38,710 nt of DNA, taken from Macrostomum lignano (lineage: Eukaryota). Under the pieces are notes generated by a model that was not told the DNA's origin, did not search any database, and saw only the letters and a program-made list of their open reading frames with translations. A program made the translations under genes and the position numbers. Of the stretch, positions 1 through 38,710 are shown one piece after another. The stretch is taken from assembly GCA_002269645.1 (NCBI GenBank), contig NIVC01001529.1:1-38710 (forward strand). Reading direction: 5' to 3'. The number at the start of each line of letters is the position of its first letter. Position 1 is the first letter of the stretch.

Positions 1-1552
1 ACAGCACCTTGCGCAATACTGCGAGTCCCAGAATGCTGAGCTGTGCTTGGAGGGCGACTCAACGTGCACCACAAGCACTGGGCAGCAAAGACACCAATAC
101 TAGAGGGAGGAGCTTCTGGCCCTTATCTCTAACACAAACCTCATGCTCTGCAACTGCAGTAGCACTCCTACCTTTAACAATGGCAGATGGACTGAGGTCC
201 TTGACGCCACACTCGTTACCCCAAGACTCTTTGACAGAGTTGAGGAGTGGAGAGTCTGGTCTGAGGAGCCCTCCCTGTCTGACCACTGCTTTATCGCCTT
301 TAACATCGCAGACACTAAACCCCAGTCCTCGATTACTTGGAGGTGTAACATCCGCAACACTGATTGGGCGGCCTAAAAGGCTACCCTTGATCTGCACCTG
401 CAGGAACTCATGGACTTACATCCAATTGAGACCTGCAAGGATATGGACCAAGTGGCTGAGAAGCTGACAGGTTGCATTATTGCAGCTTATGAGGTGGCCT
501 GCCCTGTCCATGCCTACAAAGGCAAGACCTCGGTGCCGTGGTGGAACCCGGAGCTGGGGAAACTCAGGTGGAAGGCCAAAAGCCTTCACCGCCGTGCCAT
601 GAAGACCAGAAACCTGGAGGACATGGAGCTTTTCCAACAAGCCTCCCGCAACTTCAAATCTGAAGTGCGCAAGGCCAAGGAATGTAAATGGCGCCAATTC
701 TGCAATGAATTGGATCAAGACAGACCTACTTCTAGGCTTGTCAAGGCCCTTACAATGGACAAAATGTCCAAATTAGCCATGATCAGAAAAGATGATGGCC
801 CTCTTACTAAAGACCCTGAAGAAGTGCTTCAGCATATGCTTAGCACATTCTTCCAAGGGTACCCACTGCTAGATCGGAACCCAACCACTCAATGGATGGA
901 GCCACCCTAGCAGTGGGCATAATCACTAAAGACTTAATTGCTTGTGCGGTCAGAACCTTCAAGCCCTTCAAATCTCCTGGACCTGATGGTATCTACCCTG
1001 TTCTTCTTTGTGAAGCAGCCAAGATACCCTCATTCTTGAGACTTACCCGCAATCTCATGTGGGCTTCTATCTAGCTGGGATATGTTCCCAAGTGCTGGAC
1101 CAAAGCTCGGGTAGTCTTCATTCCCAAACCTGGGAAGGGTGACTACCAGAGCGTCAAGGCCTTTAGACCAATTAGCTTAACGTCAGCAATGCTTAAACTC
1201 ACTGAGAGGCTTATTCTCTGGTGGCTGCTTTCTTGCAAGCTGACAGCAATGCCTCTCAGCAATCATCAGTACGCCTTCCATACTGGGAGTTCGACTGACA
1301 GCACCTTGCATGCGATAGTCAAGAAGATTAAATGGGCGGTACTAGGTGATGGTTATGCCTTGGCTCTTTTTCTTGACATTGTTGGCGCCTTTGACAACGT
1401 TATCTTTAAAGTGTTTCAGAGAGCCATTCAAAATCGCAAAGCTCATGCTATCCTCATATGGTGGATCATGTACATGATCTCCAACCATACAGTCACTGCC
1501 CAACTTCTTGGGCAAACTGCCTCTGCCAGAGTCTATAAGGGTGGACCCCAAA
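1..1552 (+). pseudogene. Degenerate non-LTR retrotransposon ORF (APE endonuclease C-terminus plus N-terminal half of reverse transcriptase), R1/LOA-like
   Basis: Endonuclease motifs GDxN-HH..WGS.DTN.RG (frameshifted) and LSDH (about 275-286). Then VPWWNPEL, KPFKSPGPDGIYP, W..A.VVFIPKPGK.DY..VKAFRPISLTS, QYAFHTGSST, LALFLDIVGAFDNV and GPQ. In-frame stops at 374-376 and 1072-1074, frameshift near 900. Truncated before the YADD motif; the 5' part lies outside the window. Clade assignment is from motif resemblance only. Confidence 0.9.
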
Positions 1553-1639
1553 TAGGGTGTTACAAGCTTTCACATAAGAGCTAATTGAGATGGCACAGTG
1601 CAATTAAGTAGACAAAAGAACAAAAATCGCAATATAATC

Positions 1640-24512: not shown

Positions 24513-27500
24513 ATGCTGCAATCCAAGGTGCTGATGCGCCACCCGATGTTGAAGTGGTTCTTAATGTCCCACGAGAAGCAGTCCTACGTGCTGCAGCTGG
24601 CTATTCTGTCTCTGGCTATGATTCTGTGTAAGTATTTGTTTATATTGACTTGGTTGAAATAGAACTGAATAAATCGGTTGATTTTACTGAGAATTGTTTT
24701 AATTTCATTGGCTGTTAGTCTAGCTTCAATTTCATTGGCTGTTAGTCTAGCTTCAATTTCATTGGCTGTTAGTCTAGCTTCAATTTCATTTGCTGTTCGG
24801 CTAGCTTCAATTTCATTGGCTGTTAGGCTAGCCTCAATTTCATTGGCTGTTAGTCTAGCTTCAATTTCATTGGCTGTTAGTCTAGCTTCAATTTCATTTG
24901 CTGTTCGGCTAGCTTCAATTTCATTGGCTGTTAGGCTAGCTTAAATTTCATTGGCTGTTAAGCTAGCTTCATTTTGATTGGTTGTCGGGCAGCTCATGTA
25001 TCGAATTCAGCCTATCTAAACTTACATTCCACCGCAACCCTGCAGCCTTCTGCACCCGCCTGTTCTCCGTGATCCGATTCGGCTCCATGATCCACGAGTT
25101 CGATCCCTACTTCAACTATCGCACTACAAAGTACCTGGCCGATAAAGGTTTCTACGAATTTCATAACTGGTTCGACGACCGAGCCTGGTACCCGCTCGGC
25201 GCATCATTGGCGGCACGATCTATCCCGGCCTCATGGTTACCAGCACCGCTCTGTACCATCTGTTGAACACTTTCAACTTCACCGTTGACATTCGTGAGGT
25301 TTGCGTATTCTTGGCGCCGCTGTTTAGCTCGCTAACAACTCTGGTCACCTTCCTGATGACGCGGGAGTTGCACAGCACCGGTGCTGGCCTGTTCGCCGCC
25401 TGCTGCATCAGCATCGTGCCAGGCTACATCTCCCGCTCCGTTGCCGGCTCCTACGATAACGAAGGCATCGCCATATTCTGCATGCTGCTCACCTATTATT
25501 TCTGGATTAAATCGGTGAAGACTGGCTCGCTATGCTGGTCGGCCTGCTGCGCCCTGTCCTATTTCTACATGGTGTCCGCCTGGGGCGGCTACGTTTTCCT
25601 AGTCAACCTCATCCCTATTCACGTGCTCTGCCTCATGCTCACTGGCCGATTTCATCACAAAATCTACGTTGCCTATTCCACATTCTATTGTTTAGGCACC
25701 GTATTGTCCATGCAAATTAGCTTTGTCGGTTTCCAGCCGGTCCAGACATCCGAGCATATGGGCGCTCTGGGCGTGTTCGGCCTGTGCCAGATCTATAGCT
25801 TTGTTGAGTACGTTCGATCCAAGCTGACTAAGGAGAACTTCACGGCTCTATTCAGGACTATACTCATGTTCTCTCTGGGCTGCTTCGCCCTGTTCTTAGC
25901 TGTGCTCACTCTCAGCGGAAAAGTGGCACCTTGGACTGGCCGGTTCTATTCTCTGTTGGACCCGAGCTACGCTAAGAACAACATCCCGATCATTGCGTCC
26001 GTGTCCGAGCATCAGCCTACGGCCTGGTCCAGCTTCTATTTCGATTTGCACGTGCTGACTATCATGTTCCCTGTTGGATTGTACTATTGCTTCAAGAACC
26101 TGACGGATCATAACATCTTTGTGATCCTGTACGGTGTCACCTCGATCTACTTTGCCGTGAGTGACGTTTATTTTCTATGTAGTTTCAACAGATTTTAGTG
26201 AGTTAATAGAAACAGCTGTTTACCTATGAGATTGTGATACGGTTATCTCACTGTGAGATTTTGATACTGTTATCTCACTATGAAATTTTGATACTGTTAT
26301 CTCACTATGAAATTTTGATACGGTTATCTCACTGTGAGATTGTGATACGGTTATCTCACTGTGAGATTTTGATACTGTTATCTCACTATGAGATTGTGAT
26401 ACGGTTATCTCACTGTGAGATTTTGATACTGTTATCTCACTATGAGATTTTGATACTGTTATCTCACTATGAGATTTTGATACTGTTATCTCACTATGAA
26501 ATTTTGATACGGTTATCTCACTGTGAGATTGTGATACGGTTATCTCACTATGAAATTTTGATACGGTTATCTCACTGTGAGATTGTGATACGGTTATCTC
26601 ACTGTGAGATTTTGATACTGTTATCTCACTATGAAATTTTGATACGGTTATCTCACTGTGAGTTTGTGATACGGTTATCTCACTGTGAGATTTTGATATG
26701 GTTATCTCACTATGAAATTTTGATACGGTTATCTCACTATGATATTTTGATACTGTTATCTCACTATGAGATTTTGATACTGTTATCTCACTGTGAGATT
26801 CTGATACGGTTATCTCACTGTGAGATTTTGATACTGTTATCTCACTATGAGATTTTGATACGGTTATCTCACTATGAGATTTTGATACAGTTATCTCACT
26901 GTGAGATTTTTAATCTTTTATAGCACTATAATATTTTGATACGGTTATCTCACTATAAGATTTCAATACGGTTATCTCACTATGAGATTTCAATACGGTT
27001 ATCTCACTATGAGATTTTGATAAGGTCATCTCACTATGAGATTTTGATACTGTTATCTCACCATGAGATTTTGATACCGTTATCTCACTATGAGATTTCA
27101 ATACGGTCATCTCACTATGAGATTTTGATAAGGTCATCTCACTATGAGATTTTGATAAGGTCATCTCACTATGAGATTTCAATACGATTATCTCACTATG
27201 AGATTTTGATACTGTTATCTCACTATGAGATTTTGAGATTTTGAACGAGCCATCTCATTTTAAGATTTTTAATCCAGCCATTTCACTATGAGATTTGAAT
27301 TTTTGATACGATCAGTTTACTTGATATTATGAGATTTTCAGACTTGGTATATTTGCATCAAATTTCTATTAAACTTCCCCTGCATACTACTGTTAGTATT
27401 AGCAAGATCTGCACTCTGCTATTCACAATTTTCAGGGCGTGATGGTCCGTCTGATGCTGGTGCTGGCCCCCATCATGTGCATCCTTGGCGGCATCGGGCT

Positions 27501-29061
27501 CAGCAGCGTCGCCTCCACCTACGTTCGCAACATCGACCTGACCCGTAAAGAGGATAAAAAGTCAAAGAAGTCAGCCGACAATTATCCAATTAAAAGCGAA
27601 GTGGCCCTTGTTGTTGTCTGCATAGTTGGCGCCTTCATGATGTTCTACGCTCAGCACTGCGTCTGGGTTACTAGCGAAGCCTACTCCAGCCCCAGCATTG
27701 TGCTGTCAGCCGAGACCGCCCACGGTCGCATCATTTTCGACGACTATCGCGAGGCCTACTGGTGGCTGAGGCGGAACACTCCCCCCGATGCTAAAGTGAT
27801 GAGCTGGTGGGACTACGGCTATCAGATTAGCGCTATAGCTAATCGAACTGTACTAGTGGATAATAACACCTGGAATAATACTCATATTAGCCGCGTTGGC
27901 CAGGCTATGTCCTCTCCGGAGGAGCGAGCCTATCCTATTATGCGAGAGTTGGATGTTGACTATGTTTTGGTCATCTTTGGCGGCCTGTCGGGCTATTCGT
28001 CTGACGATATTAACAAATTCCTCTGGATGGTCCGTATTGGCGGCAGCACGCCTAGCGGAGAGCATATTAAAGAGCACGATTATTATACTCCCCAGGTGAG
28101 TCTGTTTTATTGAGTAGCTCTCTAACTGTAGGTCTTTGTGTCTGCTTTAGTTGTAGGTCTTTGTGTCTGTCTCAACTGTAGGTCTTTGTGTCTGTCTCAA
28201 CTGTAGGTCTTTGTGTCTGTCTCAACTGTAGGTCTTTGTGTCTGCTTTAGTTGTAGGTCTTTGTGTCTGTCTCAATTGTAGGTCTTTGTGTCTGCTTTAG
28301 TTGTAGGTCTTTGTGTCTGTCTCAACTGTAGGTCTTTGTGTCTGTCTCAACTGTAGGTCTTTGTGTCTGTCTCAACTGTAGGTCTTTGTGTCTGTCTCAA
28401 CTGTAGGTCTTTGTGTCTGCTTTAGTTGTAGGTCTTTGTGTCTGTCTCAACTGTAGGTCTTTGTGTCTGCTTTAGTTGTAGGTCTTTGTGTCTGTCTCAA
28501 CTGTAGGTCTTTGTGTCTGTCTCAACTGTAGGTCTTTGTGTCTGTCTCAACTGTAGGTCTTTGTGTCTGCTTTAGTTGTAGGTCTTTGTGTCTGTCTCAA
28601 CTGTAGGTCTTTGTGTCTGCTTTAGTTGTAGGTCTTTGTGTCTGCTTTAGTTGTAGGTCTTTGTGTCTATTTTAACTGTAGATATTTGTGTCTGCTTTAA
28701 CTGTACAGGCCTTTGAGTCTGTCCCAACTGCAGGTCTTTGTGATTTTCCAATGGGCTGCCTTGAGCACAATCACGAGCCACTTTCCCCCTAAAACACACC
28801 GCACACCAGGGCGAGTTCCGCGTAGACAAGCTGGGCAGCAAGACTCTGCTGAACTGCCTGATGTACAAGCTGAGCTACTACAGGTTCGGCAGCATGTACA
28901 CCCAGACTGGTCAGCCCTCCGGCTACGATCGGGTTCGCAACGCCGAGATTGGCAACAAAGACTTCGAGCTGACCTATTTGGAGGAGGCCTACACCACGGA
29001 GCACTGGATAGTGCGAATCTATAAAGTTAAGAAGCCGGACAACAGGGGCAATCTGGTTTGA
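24513..29061 (+). CDS. STT3A: Oligosaccharyltransferase catalytic subunit STT3A (one -1 frameshift at about 25200)
   Basis: Exons 24513-24627, 25046-26156, 27436-28095, 28810-29061 (TGA). Motifs [25 protein letters not shown](R)[59 protein letters not shown]. Residues [15 protein letters not shown] and [12 protein letters not shown] match the STT3A rather than the STT3B type. Confidence 0.97.
24701..24972. repeat. 27-bp minisatellite (AATTTCATTGGCTGTTAGTCTAGCTTC), STT3A intron 1
   Basis: About 10 copies, direct. Confidence 0.95.
26225..27245. repeat. 27-bp minisatellite with dyad ATCTCAC-T-GTGAGAT, STT3A intron 2
   Basis: About 37 copies of GATAC(G/T)GTTATCTCACT(G/A)TGAGATTTT. Confidence 0.96.
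28123..28742. repeat. 25-bp minisatellite (CTGTAGGTCTTTGTGTCTGTCTCAA / TTGTAGGTCTTTGTGTCTGCTTTAG), STT3A intron 3
   Basis: About 24 copies of two interspersed variants. Confidence 0.96.
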
Positions 29062-29226
29062 GTAGTCTGTTAGCGAGTTGCCAATTGACTCTGAATTCAC
29101 TCCGAAACTGCTATGCTAACTTAGTAGTGTTTTTTTATGCTGGTCACATGCAATGCCTTGACCAGACATAGCCCGCTTAGATTGTCTTTTAATTCTAATT
29201 TTTTGCTAATTTTGAAGTTTCTCCGC

Positions 29227-29392
29227 AAAAATGACACCTCCCACAAAAAATGGCGCTCTCCCCCATAATAATGGCGCCTCCCACAAAAAATGGCGCCCCT
29301 TAATAAAATGGCGCACCCCCTCAAAAAATGACGCCCCCTCAAAAGCAGGGTGCCCTCATCTAAAAAAGGCACCCTCTCAAAATGACACTAGG
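29227..29392. repeat. About 20-bp degenerate repeat with AAAATG(G/A)C(G/A)C core
   Basis: Four ATGGCGC, one ATGACGC and two ATGACAC cores, each after an A-run. Confidence 0.8.
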
Positions 29393-29515: not shown

Positions 29516-29521
29516 AATAAA
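29516..29521 (+). promoter_or_regulatory. Candidate polyadenylation signal of STT3A
   Basis: AATAAA about 455 nt after the stop, followed by T/GT-rich sequence. An earlier AATAAA at about 29302 lies inside the repeat. Confidence 0.4.

Positions 29522-29630: not shown

Positions 29631-29674
<44 letters not shown>
29631..29674. repeat. (GA)n microsatellite
   Basis: Direct. Confidence 0.97.
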
Positions 29675-29678
<4 letters not shown>

Positions 29679-30365
29679 GAGACACAGAAAAGAAGAGGGG
29701 AGAGAGTAGAGTAGAGAAGAAGGGAGCTGAGAACAATCAAACTATTGTGCAGTTTCAACTCACTATCGATACATATCGTCTGTAGAAGGCTTTAAAAGTC
29801 GATCCTTGATTTTATAAAAACCAACGCCAGTTTTATATGTCTGTTGCTTTCCTAACTAAATAAATGTACGTCGATTTACCTTTCTACTGTTATAAATATA
29901 ATTAAGTAGCCACATTCGGTGACTTGAATTTAGATATTGAACTAGTTTTCCTCTTGTCTCCCTCACTTTCTCGGTGTGCGTTTTTCTGTGTCGAAGTCTA
30001 TATCCTATTAATCTGCAATCTTGTCAAAAACAGCCACACTAAATGCTGATTGTCTAATCTATTAAATCAATACAAAACTGTGTTTGCCACTCTCAATAAA
30101 ATTTGCGACCTCTGCGCTGCCAATAATAGACAATTACTAATGCTCGATATTTATAATTACTAAACGATTCATTTAGTCCAATGCTTTAGTAAAATATGTT
30201 ATATCATCTGCATAAATAAACTGACCGGGTGAACGCGGTTGTTAGTGTTAATTCTTTGTTATTATTGCTTACTCGGAGGAGTCGGAGTGACATACGGAGC
30301 TTTAAAATTTCGTTCTTTGCAATCCTACTAGCGTCATTCTGAATTAATATCCCAACTACACTACT

Positions 30366-32255: not shown

Positions 32256-32291
<36 letters not shown>

Positions 32292-32359
32292 CTAGATAGA
32301 TAGATAGATAGATAGATACTTAGATAAATACATAGATAGATAGCTAGATAGATAGATAC

Positions 32360-32415
<56 letters not shown>

Positions 32416-32427
32416 CTAGATAGATAC

Positions 32428-32466
<39 letters not shown>

Positions 32467-32512
32467 CTTAGATAAATACATAGATACTTAGATAAATACA
32501 TAGATAGATAGC

Positions 32513-32543
<31 letters not shown>

Positions 32544-32585
32544 CTAGATAGATAGATAGATAGATAGATAGATACTTAGATAAAT
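32251..32585. repeat. (GATA)n microsatellite
   Basis: Direct. Runs straight into the 273-bp array. Confidence 0.98.
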
Positions 32586-35500
32586 AGAAGATAGCGAGAA
32601 AGAGCGAGCGAAGCGAGCTCTTTCGAGCTTGCTTGCCGCAGCCAATCAAGCTGAAAGCACGCACACAAGATCACCGGAAACGATTAAGGCAGCTGGAAAG
32701 CCAATGGGCGCGGTAAGCGCTTTTATCCAGAGGAACTACCTGCTGGAACCAGCCATGCCGAACGAAAATCAGACTACTCAAGTAGTGCAAAAGAGTACGT
32801 GCAACTACCGAGAAATCTAATTTTCGTAACCGCTCCGGTGCAGGTCCTGGCTATAGATAGAAGATAGCGAGAAAGAGCGAGCGAAGCGAGCTCTTTCGAG
32901 CTTGCTTGCCGCAGCCAATCAAGCTGAAAGCACGCACACAAGATCACCGGAAACGATTAAGGCAGCTGGAAAGCCAATGGGCGCGGTAAGCGCTTTTATC
33001 CAGAGGAACTACCTGCTGGAACCAGCCATGCCGAACGAAAATCAGACTACTCAAGTAGTGCAAAAGAGTACGTGCAACTACCGAGAAATCTAATTTTCGT
33101 AACCGCTCCGGTGCAGGTCCTGGCTATAGATAGAAGATAGCGAGAAAGAGCGAGCGAAGCGAGCTCTTTCGAGCTTGCTTGCCGCAGCCAATCAAGCTGA
33201 AAGCACGCACACAAGATCACCGGAAACGATTAAGGCAGCTGGAAAGCCAATGGGCGCGGTAAGCGCTTTTATCCAGAGGAACTACCTGCTGGAACCAGCC
33301 ATGCCGAACGAAAATCAGACTACTCAAGTAGTGCAAAAGAGTACGTGCAACTACCGAGAAATCTAATTTTCGTAACCGCTCCGGTGCAGGTCCTGGCTAT
33401 AGATAGAAGATAGCGAGAAAGAGCGAGCGAAGCGAGCTCTTTCGAGCTTGCTTGCCGCAGCCAATCAAGCTGAAAGCACGCACACAAGATCACCGGAAAC
33501 GATTAAGGCAGCTGGAAAGCCAATGGGCGCGGTAAGCGCTTTTATCCAGAGGAACTACCTGCTGGAACCAGCCATGCCGAACGAAAATCAGACTACTCAA
33601 GTAGTGCAAAAGAGTACGTGCAACTACCGAGAAATCTAATTTTCGTAACCGCTCCGGTGCAGGTCCTGGCTATAGATAGAAGATAGCGAGAAAGAGCGAG
33701 CGAAGCGAGCTCTTTCGAGCTTGCTTGCCGCAGCCAATCAAGCTGAAAGCACGCACACAAGATCACCGGAAACGATTAAGGCAGCTGGAAAGCCAATGGG
33801 CGCGGTAAGCGCTTTTATCCAGAGGAACTACCTGCTGGAACCAGCCATGCCGAACGAAAATCAGACTACTCAAGTAGTGCAAAAGAGTACGTGCAACTAC
33901 CGAGAAATCTAATTTTCGTAACCGCTCCGGTGCAGGTCCTGGCTATAGATAGAAGATAGCGAGAAAGAGCGAGCGAAGCGAGCTCTTTCGAGCTTGCTTG
34001 CCGCAGCCAATCAAGCTGAAAGCACGCACACAAGATCACCGGAAACGATTAAGGCAGCTGGAAAGCCAATGGGCGCGGTAAGCGCTTTTATCCAGAGGAA
34101 CTACCTGCTGGAACCAGCCATGCCGAACGAAAATCAGACTACTCAAGTAGTGCAAAAGAGTACGTGCAACTACCGAGAAATCTAATTTTCGTAACCGCTC
34201 CGGTGCAGGTCCTGGCTATAGATAGAAGATAGCGAGAAAGAGCGAGCGAAGCGAGCTCTTTCGAGCTTGCTTGCCGCAGCCAATCAAGCTGAAAGCACGC
34301 ACACAAGATCACCGGAAACGATTAAGGCAGCTGGAAAGCCAATGGGCGCGGTAAGCGCTTTTATCCAGAGGAACTACCTGCTGGAACCAGCCATGCCGAA
34401 CGAAAATCAGACTACTCAAGTAGTGCAAAAGAGTACGTGCAACTACCGAGAAATCTAATTTTCGTAACCGCTCCGGTGCAGGTCCTGGCTATAGATAGAA
34501 GATAGCGAGAAAGAGCGAGCGAAGCGAGCTCTTTCGAGCTTGCTTGCCGCAGCCAATCAAGCTGAAAGCACGCACACAAGATCACCGGAAACGATTAAGG
34601 CAGCTGGAAAGCCAATGGGCGCGGTAAGCGCTTTTATCCAGAGGAACTACCTGCTGGAACCAGCCATGCCGAACGAAAATCAGACTACTCAAGTAGTGCA
34701 AAAGAGTACGTGCAACTACCGAGAAATCTAATTTTCGTAACCGCTCCGGTGCAGGTCCTGGCTATAGATAGAAGATAGCGAGAAAGAGCGAGCGAAGCGA
34801 GCTCTTTCGAGCTTGCTTGCCGCAGCCAATCAAGCTGAAAGCACGCACACAAGATCACCGGAAACGATTAAGGCAGCTGGAAAGCCAATGGGCGCGGTAA
34901 GCGCTTTTATCCAGAGGAACTACCTGCTGGAACCAGCCATGCCGAACGAAAATCAGACTACTCAAGTAGTGCAAAAGAGTACGTGCAACTACCGAGAAAT
35001 CTAATTTTCGTAACCGCTCCGGTGCAGGTCCTGGCTATAGATAGAAGATAGCGAGAAAGAGCGAGCGAAGCGAGCTCTTTCGAGCTTGCTTGCCGCAGCC
35101 AATCAAGCTGAAAGCACGCACACAAGATCACCGGAAACGATTAAGGCAGCTGGAAAGCCAATGGGCGCGGTAAGCGCTTTTATCCAGAGGAACTACCTGC
35201 TGGAACCAGCCATGCCGAACGAAAATCAGACTACTCAAGTAGTGCAAAAGAGTACGTGCAACTACCGAGAAATCTAATTTTCGTAACCGCTCCGGTGCAG
35301 GTCCTGGCTATAGATAGAAGATAGCGAGAAAGAGCGAGCGAAGCGAGCTCTTTCGAGCTTGCTTGCCGCAGCCAATCAAGCTGAAAGCACGCACACAAGA
35401 TCACCGGAAACGATTAAGGCAGCTGGAAAGCCAATGGGCGCGGTAAGCGCTTTTATCCAGAGGAACTACCTGCTGGAACCAGCCATGCCGAACGAAAATC

Positions 35501-38500
35501 AGACTACTCAAGTAGTGCAAAAGAGTACGTGCAACTACCGAGAAATCTAATTTTCGTAACCGCTCCGGTGCAGGTCCTGGCTATAGATAGAAGATAGCGA
35601 GAAAGAGCGAGCGAAGCGAGCTCTTTCGAGCTTGCTTGCCGCAGCCAATCAAGCTGAAAGCACGCACACAAGATCACCGGAAACGATTAAGGCAGCTGGA
35701 AAGCCAATGGGCGCGGTAAGCGCTTTTATCCAGAGGAACTACCTGCTGGAACCAGCCATGCCGAACGAAAATCAGACTACTCAAGTAGTGCAAAAGAGTA
35801 CGTGCAACTACCGAGAAATCTAATTTTCGTAACCGCTCCGGTGCAGGTCCTGGCTATAGATAGAAGATAGCGAGAAAGAGCGAGCGAAGCGAGCTCTTTC
35901 GAGCTTGCTTGCCGCAGCCAATCAAGCTGAAAGCACGCACACAAGATCACCGGAAACGATTAAGGCAGCTGGAAAGCCAATGGGCGCGGTAAGCGCTTTT
36001 ATCCAGAGGAACTACCTGCTGGAACCAGCCATGCCGAACGAAAATCAGACTACTCAAGTAGTGCAAAAGAGTACGTGCAACTACCGAGAAATCTAATTTT
36101 CGTAACCGCTCCGGTGCAGGTCCTGGCTATAGATAGAAGATAGCGAGAAAGAGCGAGCGAAGCGAGCTCTTTCGAGCTTGCTTGCCGCAGCCAATCAAGC
36201 TGAAAGCACGCACACAAGATCACCGGAAACGATTAAGGCAGCTGGAAAGCCAATGGGCGCGGTAAGCGCTTTTATCCAGAGGAACTACCTGCTGGAACCA
36301 GCCATGCCGAACGAAAATCAGACTACTCAAGTAGTGCAAAAGAGTACGTGCAACTACCGAGAAATCTAATTTTCGTAACCGCTCCGGTGCAGGTCCTGGC
36401 TATAGATAGAAGATAGCGAGAAAGAGCGAGCGAAGCGAGCTCTTTCGAGCTTGCTTGCCGCAGCCAATCAAGCTGAAAGCACGCACACAAGATCACCGGA
36501 AACGATTAAGGCAGCTGGAAAGCCAATGGGCGCGGTAAGCGCTTTTATCCAGAGGAACTACCTGCTGGAACCAGCCATGCCGAACGAAAATCAGACTACT
36601 CAAGTAGTGCAAAAGAGTACGTGCAACTACCGAGAAATCTAATTTTCGTAACCGCTCCGGTGCAGGTCCTGGCTATAGATAGAAGATAGCGAGAAAGAGC
36701 GAGCGAAGCGAGCTCTTTCGAGCTTGCTTGCCGCAGCCAATCAAGCTGAAAGCACGCACACAAGATCACCGGAAACGATTAAGGCAGCTGGAAAGCCAAT
36801 GGGCGCGGTAAGCGCTTTTATCCAGAGGAACTACCTGCTGGAACCAGCCATGCCGAACGAAAATCAGACTACTCAAGTAGTGCAAAAGAGTACGTGCAAC
36901 TACCGAGAAATCTAATTTTCGTAACCGCTCCGGTGCAGGTCCTGGCTATAGATAGAAGATAGCGAGAAAGAGCGAGCGAAGCGAGCTCTTTCGAGCTTGC
37001 TTGCCGCAGCCAATCAAGCTGAAAGCACGCACACAAGATCACCGGAAACGATTAAGGCAGCTGGAAAGCCAATGGGCGCGGTAAGCGCTTTTATCCAGAG
37101 GAACTACCTGCTGGAACCAGCCATGCCGAACGAAAATCAGACTACTCAAGTAGTGCAAAAGAGTACGTGCAACTACCGAGAAATCTAATTTTCGTAACCG
37201 CTCCGGTGCAGGTCCTGGCTATAGATAGAAGATAGCGAGAAAGAGCGAGCGAAGCGAGCTCTTTCGAGCTTGCTTGCCGCAGCCAATCAAGCTGAAAGCA
37301 CGCACACAAGATCACCGGAAACGATTAAGGCAGCTGGAAAGCCAATGGGCGCGGTAAGCGCTTTTATCCAGAGGAACTACCTGCTGGAACCAGCCATGCC
37401 GAACGAAAATCAGACTACTCAAGTAGTGCAAAAGAGTACGTGCAACTACCGAGAAATCTAATTTTCGTAACCGCTCCGGTGCAGGTCCTGGCTATAGATA
37501 GAAGATAGCGAGAAAGAGCGAGCGAAGCGAGCTCTTTCGAGCTTGCTTGCCGCAGCCAATCAAGCTGAAAGCACGCACACAAGATCACCGGAAACGATTA
37601 AGGCAGCTGGAAAGCCAATGGGCGCGGTAAGCGCTTTTATCCAGAGGAACTACCTGCTGGAACCAGCCATGCCGAACGAAAATCAGACTACTCAAGTAGT
37701 GCAAAAGAGTACGTGCAACTACCGAGAAATCTAATTTTCGTAACCGCTCCGGTGCAGGTCCTGGCTATAGATAGAAGATAGCGAGAAAGAGCGAGCGAAG
37801 CGAGCTCTTTCGAGCTTGCTTGCCGCAGCCAATCAAGCTGAAAGCACGCACACAAGATCACCGGAAACGATTAAGGCAGCTGGAAAGCCAATGGGCGCGG
37901 TAAGCGCTTTTATCCAGAGGAACTACCTGCTGGAACCAGCCATGCCGAACGAAAATCAGACTACTCAGAGTAGTGCAAAAGAGTACGTGCAACTACCGAG
38001 AAATCTAATTTTCGTAACCGCTCCGGTGCACGGTCCTGGCTATAGATAGAAGATAGCGAGAAAGAGCGAGCGAAGCGAGCTCTTTCGAGCTTGCTTGCCG
38101 CAGCCAATCAAGCTGAAAGCACGCACACAAGATCACCGGAAACGATTAAGCAGCTGGAAAGCCAATGGGCGCGGTAAGCGCTTTTATCCAGAGGAACTAC
38201 CTGCTGGAACCAGCCATGCCGAAACGAAAATCAGACTACTCAAGTAGTGCAAAAGAGTACGTGCAACTACCGAGAAATCTAATTTTCGTAACCGCTCTCG
38301 GTGCAGCGTCCTGGCTATAGATAGAAGATAGCGAGAAAGAGCGAGCGCGAAGCGAGCTCTTTCGAGCTTGCTTGCCGCAGCCAATCAAGCTGAAAGCACG
38401 CACAAAGATCACCCGAAACGATTAAGGCAGCTGGAAAGCCAATGGGCGCGCGTAAGCGCTTTTATCCAGAGAACTACCTGCTGGAACCAGCCATGCCGAA

Positions 38501-38710
38501 CGAAAATCAGACTACTCAAGTAGTGCAAAAGAGTACGTGCAACTACCGAGAAATCTAATTTTCGTAACCGCTCCGGTTGCAGGTCCTGGCTATAGATAGA
38601 AGATAGCGAGAAAGAGCGAGCGAAGCGAGCTCTTTCGAGCTTGCTTGCCGCAGCCAATCAAGCTGAAAGCACGCACACAAGATCACCGGAAACGATTAAG
38701 GCAGCTGGAA
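32584..38710. repeat. Tandem array of an unidentified 273-bp unit, about 22.4 copies, running off the window end
   Basis: The ORF track shows the same 63-aa translation at exact 273-bp spacing from 32629 to 37543 (19 copies). Copies after about 37960 differ mainly by single-base indels. Confidence 0.99.

What the first reader, a model, noticed from the sequence alone, without database searches (positions are those of the whole stretch)
32584..38710. Homogeneous 273-bp array whose unit looks like a structured RNA or mini-transcription unit rather than a plain satellite
At least 19 copies appear identical, so amplification or homogenisation is very recent. The unit holds about 19 CpG and is packed with dyads (first copy): AAGCGAGCTC-TTTC-GAGCTTGCTT (32611-32634; a C-GAAA-G GNRA tetraloop on the minus strand), mutually exclusive with GAAAGAGC/GCTCTTTC (32598-32605/32617-32624); GCGC-GGTAA-GCGC presenting a G|GTAAG donor-like site (32708-32720); CCAG-AGG/CCT-G-CTGG; ACTAC-TCAA-GTAGT; GTAGTGCA/TGCAACTAC; and a long-range CACCGGA/TCCGGTG pair (32672/32834). 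There are two GCCAAT boxes (CCAAT at 32642, 32701) and an Sm-like AATTTTCG (32819) followed by a small hairpin. I could not match it to 5S, tRNA, U snRNAs, a flatworm SL or known ribozyme cores. Candidates: an unknown small-RNA gene array, a retrozyme-like rolling-circle element with a novel catalytic fold, or a centromeric or subtelomeric satellite.
Basis: partly seen in the sequence, partly recalled or inferred. Interest (0 to 1): 0.7.

Follow-up and report, generated by a model that had tools for sequence, protein, structure and literature searches.

The report
Orphan 273-bp satellite, dyad-rich
The end of this animal genome window is a real, very uniform 273-bp tandem repeat with many inverted repeats, but it looks like an ordinary species-specific satellite DNA at an unfinished contig end, not a known RNA gene or ribozyme.

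Summary
A 273-bp head-to-tail array runs from 32584 to the last base, about 22.4 copies. Exactly 19 copies are identical, and every dyad, CCAAT, GGTAAG and AATTTTCG coordinate is correct. The unit folds better than shuffles (z about -4 to -5).

The structured-RNA reading gains no support:
- The excess is about equal on both strands and with DNA parameters. 55 base pairs are shared between the two strands' folds, so these are DNA-level inverted repeats.
- 4 of 112 control segments from the same window fold as well.
- Rfam gives nothing real, even at E<=10. There is no tRNA, no hammerhead core, no canonical Sm site, no open frame and no Pfam hit.
- CpG o/e of 1.09 is matched by 12% of other windows.

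The last 940 bp carry 14 single-base indels and one substitution. That is the signature of an unpolished long-read contig end, so the perfect identity may partly come from consensus building.

No relative was found in plasmids, phages, metagenome, prokaryote-genome or viral contigs, 5.8 billion proteins, or papers. Covariation therefore cannot be tested.

Best reading: an undescribed satellite in an unidentified animal, 3 kb downstream of STT3A and abutting an (ATAG)n microsatellite. A transcribed small-RNA array is not excluded; the unit has a 27-bp pre-miRNA-like hairpin on the minus strand.

The parts
32256..32594 (.). (ATAG)n microsatellite, about 85 copies, directly abutting the array. 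The unit's own boundary motif CTATAG|ATAGAAGATAG is ATAG-like, so the junction lies in microhomology.
32584..37770 (.). 19 head-to-tail copies of the 273-bp unit, 100% identical
37771..38710 (.). 3.4 further copies carrying 14 small indels and 1 substitution. Likely an unpolished long-read contig end. The array runs off the window.
32611..32634 (.). First copy: 10-bp dyad AAGCGAGCTC/GAGCTTGCTT with a 4-nt spacer. It has one G.U on the plus strand and an A.C mismatch on the minus. It overlaps, and so excludes, the 8-bp dyad 32598-32605/32617-32624.
32672..32840 (.). First copy: large closed domain. The long-range helix CACCGGA (32672-32678)/TCCGGTG (32834-32840) encloses a branched arm (32688-32759) and the long hairpin. 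It is predicted on both strands and with DNA parameters.
32762..32827 (.). First copy: longest inverted repeat, ACGAAAATCAGACTACTCAAGTAGTGCA / TGCAACTACCGAGAAATCTAATTTTCGT. As minus-strand RNA (72-nt construct, 32759-32830) it folds at -27.9 kcal/mol, z -6.5, MFEI 1.0. As plus-strand RNA it folds at -18.8. It contains the Sm-like AATTTTCG within its stem.
32708..32720 (+). First copy: GCGC-GGTAA-GCGC mini-hairpin holding the only GTAAG in the unit

Best explanation
This is a species-specific, non-coding satellite DNA. A 273-bp monomer was amplified head to tail, with unequal exchange, replication slippage or rolling-circle amplification as the usual routes (inferred). It is kept uniform by gene conversion and unequal crossing-over (inferred).

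The array lies in intergenic DNA about 3 kb downstream of the STT3A gene of an unidentified animal and starts in microhomology with an (ATAG)n microsatellite. The assembly breaks inside it, so the true array is probably much longer.

The many dyads are inverted repeats of the DNA itself. If they matter, the most likely role is at the DNA or chromatin level: hairpin or cruciform-prone non-B DNA, as described for many centromeric satellites. A dedicated RNA gene is less likely. Any transcripts would be by-products that could feed small-RNA or heterochromatin pathways (inferred, not shown).
For: - Period 273, 22.4 copies, 19 of them identical.
- Stop codons in every frame of the unit. No Pfam family for its peptides. 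No similar protein among 5.8 billion.
- No Rfam family at gathering level in the whole window. Only a 14-bit chance hit at E<=10 over three units.
- No tRNA. No CUGANGA hammerhead core on either strand. No canonical Sm site.
- Fold excess is similar on both strands (z -4.0/-5.4; -4.5/-4.7) and with DNA parameters (z -4.3).
- 55 base pairs are common to the two strands' MFE structures.
- Dyad enrichment is a described property of centromeric satellites (PMC5889037).
- The array ends the window with indel-noisy copies, as at a contig break in a long repeat.
- No copy or fragment of the unit occurs elsewhere in the window.
Against: - The unit's fold z-score lies in the top ~4% of the window's background. 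The 27-bp hairpin is strikingly good as minus-strand RNA.
- G.U pairs number 9 on the minus strand against 2 on the plus (two-sided binomial about 0.07). The U-rich minus strand explains part of this. It is a weak hint of an RNA-level constraint.
- Genome-wide abundance, chromosomal position and chromatin state are unknown.
- Dfam, Repbase and eukaryotic nucleotide databases could not be searched.
Confidence: 0.7

Rival explanations
1. An array of genes for an unknown small RNA. Candidates are an SL-RNA or snRNA-like transcript on the plus strand (GGTAAG donor, AAUUUUCG), or a tandem cluster of miRNA-like hairpins on the minus strand, comparable in layout to the mir-430-type arrays recalled from my own knowledge.
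For: - Short homogeneous tandem units are typical of SL RNA and some small-RNA gene arrays (own knowledge).
- There is one GTAAG per unit, and T4 runs at unit positions 138 and 238 on the plus strand.
- The minus-strand 72-nt hairpin folds at -27.9 kcal/mol, z -6.5, MFEI 1.0.
- G.U pairs number 9 (minus) against 2 (plus).
- The whole-unit z is -4 to -5.
Against: - No Rfam family matches, including SL, snRNA and miRNA families, even at E<=10.
- No canonical Sm site RAU3-6GR on either strand.
- AAUUUUCG is paired inside the long hairpin in all predicted folds.
- The donor-to-Sm distance of about 108 nt is longer than in SL RNAs I know of (own knowledge).
- The fold excess is not strand-specific.
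- No comparative support is obtainable.
Confidence: 0.1
2. A retrozyme-like rolling-circle or circRNA element whose monomer carries a new kind of self-cleaving fold.
For: - The tandem monomer size falls within the 150-450 bp described for metazoan non-LTR retrozymes, which give highly self-paired circRNAs (PMC7229834).
- The circular fold is significantly stable.
- A degraded reverse-transcriptase fragment is present in the window, but 31 kb away.
Against: - The defining type I hammerhead is absent. No CUGANGA on either strand, and only one 1-mismatch site, which has no HHR skeleton.
- No hammerhead, twister, HDV-like, hairpin, pistol or hatchet hit in Rfam at E<=10.
- GC of 50.5% is above the <45-50% given for these elements.
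- A novel ribozyme has a very low prior.
Confidence: 0.03
3. The repeats are the expanded internal tandem-repeat module of a mobile element, for example a Helentron/Helitron-type or MITE-like non-autonomous element in which satellite-like repeats sit next to a microsatellite. On this reading it is not a free-standing satellite.
For: - The array directly abuts a 340-bp (ATAG)n microsatellite.
- That layout recalls tandem-repeat-plus-microsatellite modules described in bivalve and Drosophila elements (own knowledge, not tested).
- The unit has GC-rich hairpins.
Against: - No element termini or transposase/Rep coding sequence were seen in the 3 kb upstream.
- The far side of the array lies outside the window.
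- No dispersed short copies occur in the window.
- 22 or more copies is more than I recall for arrays carried inside such elements (own knowledge, not tested).
Confidence: 0.1
4. Largely an assembly artefact. A real repeat exists, but its placement next to (ATAG)n, its copy number and its perfect identity come from collapse, mis-joining at the microsatellite and consensus polishing.
For: - The last 940 bp are indel-noisy (14 indels, 1 substitution).
- The array sits at the window end.
- The junction lies in low-complexity ATAG microhomology.
- Other arrays in the same window retain 7-29% variation between copies, whereas this one has none.
Against: - 19 clean copies imply consistent read support.
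- An artefact would not change what the monomer is.
Confidence: 0.07

Closest known systems
Dyad-rich (centromeric) satellite DNAs, as surveyed by Kasinathan and Henikoff 2018 (PMC5889037)
   Same: A long head-to-tail array of a non-coding monomer of a few hundred bp. Short dyad symmetries are enriched over composition-matched shuffles and predicted to form hairpins or cruciforms. No CENP-B box is present, as in the dyad-rich class.
   Different: Centromeric location and CENP-A binding are unknown. Besides the <10-bp dyads, the unit has a long 27-bp imperfect palindrome and a long-range helix. No sequence relative is known.
Metazoan non-LTR retrozymes and hammerhead-bearing satellites (newt satellite 2 type; PMC7229834)
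   Same: A tandem monomer in the 150-450 bp range and a highly self-paired predicted monomer RNA.
   Different: No hammerhead core and no other Rfam ribozyme. GC is 50.5% rather than <45-50%. Expression and circularity are untested.
Spliced-leader RNA gene arrays (own knowledge: short tandem units, for example about 264 bp in Ciona)
   Same: A short, homogeneous tandem unit with one GGTAAG per unit and a U-run motif downstream.
   Different: No canonical Sm site, and the Sm-like motif is predicted to be paired. The donor-to-Sm spacing is about 108 nt. No Rfam SL family matches.
Tandem miRNA gene arrays (mir-430/mir-427 type; own knowledge)
   Same: One roughly 70-nt hairpin with pre-miRNA-like stability per repeat on the minus strand.
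   Different: No match to any Rfam miRNA family. The hairpin sits in a three-way junction rather than between single-stranded flanks. There is no evidence of processing.

Membership tests
Satellite DNA | Long head-to-tail array of a monomer of about 100 bp or more | tested here: met
   Period 273, 22.4 copies, running off the window
Satellite DNA | Non-coding monomer | tested here: met
   At least 2 stops per unit in each frame. No Pfam hit. No protein relative at E<=10.
Satellite DNA | High genomic abundance and heterochromatic, centromeric or subtelomeric location | not testable with these tools
   Only one 38.7-kb window is available. No reads, no chromosome map.
Dyad-rich centromeric satellite (Kasinathan and Henikoff) | Dyad symmetry enriched over composition-matched permutations | tested here: met
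   DNA fold z -4.3. Inverted repeats listed. However, 4 of 112 local controls fold as well.
Dyad-rich centromeric satellite (Kasinathan and Henikoff) | Association with CENP-A / the functional centromere | not testable with these tools
   Needs ChIP, CUT&Tag or FISH
Metazoan non-LTR retrozyme | Tandem repeat monomer of about 150-450 bp | tested here: met
   273 bp; range taken from PMC7229834
Metazoan non-LTR retrozyme | Type I hammerhead ribozyme (CUGANGA ... GAAA core with helices I-III) | tested here: not met
   No CUGANGA on either strand. No hammerhead family in Rfam at E<=10 over three units.
Metazoan non-LTR retrozyme | Expressed as linear and circular RNA of monomer size | not testable with these tools
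   No transcript data
Spliced-leader RNA gene | Single-stranded Sm site (RAU3-6GR) between stem-loops downstream of the donor | tested here: not met
   No match on either strand. AAUUUUCG is paired in the long hairpin.
Spliced-leader RNA gene | 5' leader followed by a GU donor | tested here: inconclusive
   One GGTAAG per unit at 32712-32717. A single such hexamer is not informative on its own.
Spliced-leader RNA gene | Leader sequence found at the 5' ends of many mRNAs | not testable with these tools
   No transcriptome of this organism is within reach. The best STT3A relative in the protein collection is only 75% identical.
5S rRNA / tRNA / U snRNA genes | Match to the family covariance model or tRNA cloverleaf | tested here: not met
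   Rfam: 0 at gathering level and nothing relevant at E<=10. ARAGORN: 0.
Tandem miRNA cluster | Stable hairpin of about 60-70 nt per unit | tested here: met
   Minus strand -27.9 kcal/mol, z -6.5, MFEI 1.0
Tandem miRNA cluster | Mature ~22-nt products with defined ends, or homology to a known miRNA family | tested here: inconclusive
   No Rfam miRNA family matches. Small-RNA reads are not available.

The most novel reading that the evidence does not exclude
Each 273-bp unit is a gene for a branched structured RNA of about 190 nt. The structure would be a long-range closing helix, a three-hairpin arm and a 27-bp hairpin, better formed on the minus strand. It would be made in bulk from the array, either as a new small-RNA or miRNA-like family or as a circular rolling-circle RNA with an undescribed self-cleaving fold.
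Probability: 0.08. Interest if true: 0.6.

Novelty: new member of a known kind. Interest (0 to 1): 0.18.

Why it matters
If it is an ordinary satellite, it matters mainly for assembly. It marks a contig break and probably a heterochromatic block near STT3A in this genome. It also adds one more example of a dyad-rich satellite to the debate on non-B DNA at centromeres.

It would become interesting only if discrete transcripts, self-cleavage or covariation were found. It would then be a new tandemly encoded RNA family in an animal lineage that has no close relative in the searched databases.

Tried and rejected
RNA families and motifs
- Rfam at gathering level on the whole window gave 0. Rfam at E<=10 over three units gave only RAGATH-8 at 14 bits against a cut-off of 86.7, which I reject as chance.
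- ARAGORN gave 0.
- Regex scans for the hammerhead core, CENP-B box and Sm consensus found none.

Coding potential
- Six-frame translation shows stops in all frames.
- Pfam on the five longest peptides gave nothing.
- The concatenated unit peptides against 5.8 billion proteins gave nothing at E<=10. The aim was to catch gene calls made on the same or a related satellite in other assemblies.
- Exact-product look-ups for two unit ORFs and two STT3A ORFs were not on record.

Contaminant and relative searches
- blastn against plasmids and phages gave no match.
- Exact 23-24-mers gave 0 in every collection. The same two were scanned in metagenome and genome contigs. Viral contigs were scanned with the first of these and a third 23-mer.
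- Full-text search for six unit sub-strings gave 0.
- Full-text search for a 273-bp satellite found nothing relevant.

Organism
- An STT3A exon against the protein collection gave a best identity of only 75%. Named hits are spread over molluscs, vertebrates, insects, sponges and flatworms. The species and its near relatives are therefore absent, and the phylum cannot be named.

Ideas rejected
- CpG richness as a sign of a CpG island or foreign DNA: 12% of other windows match it.
- Strand-specific RNA structure: z-scores are similar on both strands, and the G.U asymmetry is marginal and partly compositional.

Full report
**1. What is there**

Tandem Repeats Finder reports a single array from 32580 to the last base of the window (38710), with period 273, 22.4 copies and 99% matches.

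The remaining 940 bp still follow the unit but differ by 14 one- or two-base indels and only one substitution. Real divergence between satellite copies is dominated by substitutions. An indel-only pattern confined to the last kilobase is what an unpolished long-read contig end looks like. So the window almost certainly ends where the assembly broke inside a longer array. The perfect identity of the 19 copies may partly be a product of consensus polishing. This weakens the inference that amplification was very recent, though it does not remove it.

These are the 10-bp and 8-bp overlapping dyads, GCGC-GGTAA-GCGC, the CACCGGA/TCCGGTG long-range pair, two CCAAT, AATTTTCG and 19 CpG.

**2. Context**

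The window is animal nuclear DNA.
- It carries STT3A exons (25233-26198, 27439-28113 and a last exon ending with TGA at 29060-29062).
- It carries pieces of an FG-GAP-repeat gene.
- It carries a degraded reverse-transcriptase fragment at 1-1600.
- It holds about 30 mini- and microsatellite arrays.

The best STT3A relatives in 5.8 billion proteins are only 75% identical and spread over many phyla. The species and its close relatives are therefore not in the collections I can reach.

The 273-bp array starts about 3 kb downstream of STT3A and directly abuts a 340-bp (ATAG)n microsatellite (32256-32594). The unit's own boundary reads CTATAG|ATAGAAGATAG, so the junction lies in ATAG microhomology. 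No copy or fragment of the unit occurs elsewhere in the window.

**3. Is the dyad content more than chance?**

Yes, but it is not exceptional locally.
- As RNA, the unit folds at -92.6 kcal/mol on the plus strand (z -4.0) and -104.6 on the minus strand (z -5.4) against dinucleotide shuffles.
- As circles, z is -3.9 and -4.5.
- With DNA parameters, z is -4.3.
- With the same procedure, 112 control strand-segments of 273 nt from the non-tandem part of the window have mean z -0.59 and sd 1.39. Four of them reach -4 or lower, all within the old retroelement fragment.

The unit is therefore in roughly the top 4% of the local background.

**4. DNA dyads or RNA structure?**

The plus and minus minimum-energy structures share 55 base pairs. 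The shared elements are:
- the long-range helix (unit 89-95/251-257);
- a branched arm with three small hairpins (105-176);
- a long imperfect palindrome (179-206/217-244).

A fold that is about equally significant on both strands, and also with DNA parameters, is what inverted repeats in the DNA give. It is not evidence for an RNA made from one strand.

There is a weak asymmetry. The minus-strand fold uses 9 G.U pairs and the plus-strand fold 2 (two-sided binomial about 0.07). The long hairpin is much better as minus-strand RNA (-27.9 kcal/mol, z -6.5, MFEI 1.0) than as plus-strand RNA (-18.8). However, the minus strand is U-rich (87 U against 48), which favours G.U pairs. The other strong hairpin (32611-32634) shows the opposite preference, with a G.U on the plus strand and an A.C mismatch on the minus. 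I treat the asymmetry as a lead, not a result.

**5. Tests of the specific RNA and element readings**

- Rfam finds nothing at gathering level in the whole window. At E<=10 over three consecutive units, which covers every circular permutation, it gives only RAGATH-8 at 14 bits against a cut-off of 86.7, i.e. chance. This argues against 5S, snRNAs, known SL RNAs, known miRNA families and all described small ribozymes.
- ARAGORN finds no tRNA-like gene.
- The invariant hammerhead core CUGANGA is absent from both strands. The unit therefore fails the defining feature of metazoan non-LTR retrozymes. These are 150-450-bp tandem repeats with a type I hammerhead and GC below 45-50% (PMC7229834). The unit's GC is 50.5%.
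- No canonical Sm site (RAU3-6GR) exists on either strand. The Sm-like AAUUUUCG forms one arm of the long hairpin in every predicted fold. It lies about 108 nt from the GGTAAG, further than in SL RNAs I know of (own knowledge).
- The unit has stops in all six frames. Its peptides match no Pfam family and no protein at E<=10.
- CpG o/e of 1.09 is matched or exceeded by 12% of 273-bp windows elsewhere in the window, so it does not mark the unit as special or foreign.
- There is no CENP-B box, even with two mismatches allowed.

**6. Relatives**

None was found.
- No match in plasmids or phages.
- Exact 23-24-mers from three parts of the unit gave zero matches in metagenome, prokaryote-genome and viral contigs.
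- Unit sub-strings occur in no paper of the library.
- A search for a 273-bp satellite found nothing relevant.

With 19 identical copies and 3.4 error-laden ones, the window itself offers no variation. Covariation, the one computational test that could separate RNA structure from DNA palindromes, could not be run.

**7. Best explanation and rivals**

The most likely reading (about 0.7) is an undescribed, species-specific satellite DNA. It is a non-coding 273-bp monomer amplified head to tail and homogenised by unequal exchange and conversion, with an assembly break inside it. Its dyads are DNA-level features of the kind reported to be enriched in centromeric satellites and predicted to form non-B DNA (PMC5889037). 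The tandem structure, the non-coding nature and the dyad excess are shown. The amplification mechanism, any chromatin role and the chromosomal location are inferred.

Rivals:
- An unknown small-RNA gene array: about 0.1. Its best support is the pre-miRNA-like minus-strand hairpin.
- The expanded internal repeat module of a mobile element next to a microsatellite: about 0.1.
- Mostly an assembly artefact as regards placement, copy number and identity: about 0.07.
- A retrozyme-like element with a new ribozyme: about 0.03.

**8. Verdict**

Nothing tested favours the claim of a structured RNA rather than a plain satellite.

I classify it as a new member of a known kind (an orphan satellite family) and rate its interest as low. 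The RNA readings stay open only because transcripts, self-cleavage and sister-species copies are out of reach with these tools.

Noticed in passing
window 26199-27438 and 28114-28790: The two STT3A introns between the exons at 25233-26198, 27439-28113 and about 28800-29062 consist almost entirely of minisatellite arrays: a 27-bp unit x37.5 at 26224-27236, and a 25-bp unit x24.8 at 28119-28742.
   Followed up: partly
window 10329-16769: Between two ORFs at 9775-10239 and 17375-17827, the latter with an FG-GAP Pfam match and possibly pieces of one gene, lie four large arrays: a 23-bp unit x46, a 12-bp CCTCTCCCTTCC unit x80, a 23-bp unit x115 (13359-15982) and (TAG)172. The window as a whole holds about 30 distinct tandem arrays, an unusually high density.
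   Followed up: no
window 1-1600: A degraded non-LTR-type reverse-transcriptase fragment gives a weak RVT_1 match at 1189-1581. Its 273-nt segments at 547-1365 fold unusually well on both strands (z down to -6.3), better than the satellite unit.
   Followed up: partly
window 37771-38710: The last 940 bp carry 14 small indels and 1 substitution relative to the otherwise invariant unit. This suggests an unpolished long-read contig end and a collapsed or truncated array.
   Followed up: yes
window 29227-29344: The STT3A 3' region holds a short array of about 20/38-bp units, AAAAATGGCGCC(T/C)CCC. It is followed by a likely AATAAA signal near 29518 and a (GA)44 tract at 29631-29717.
   Followed up: no
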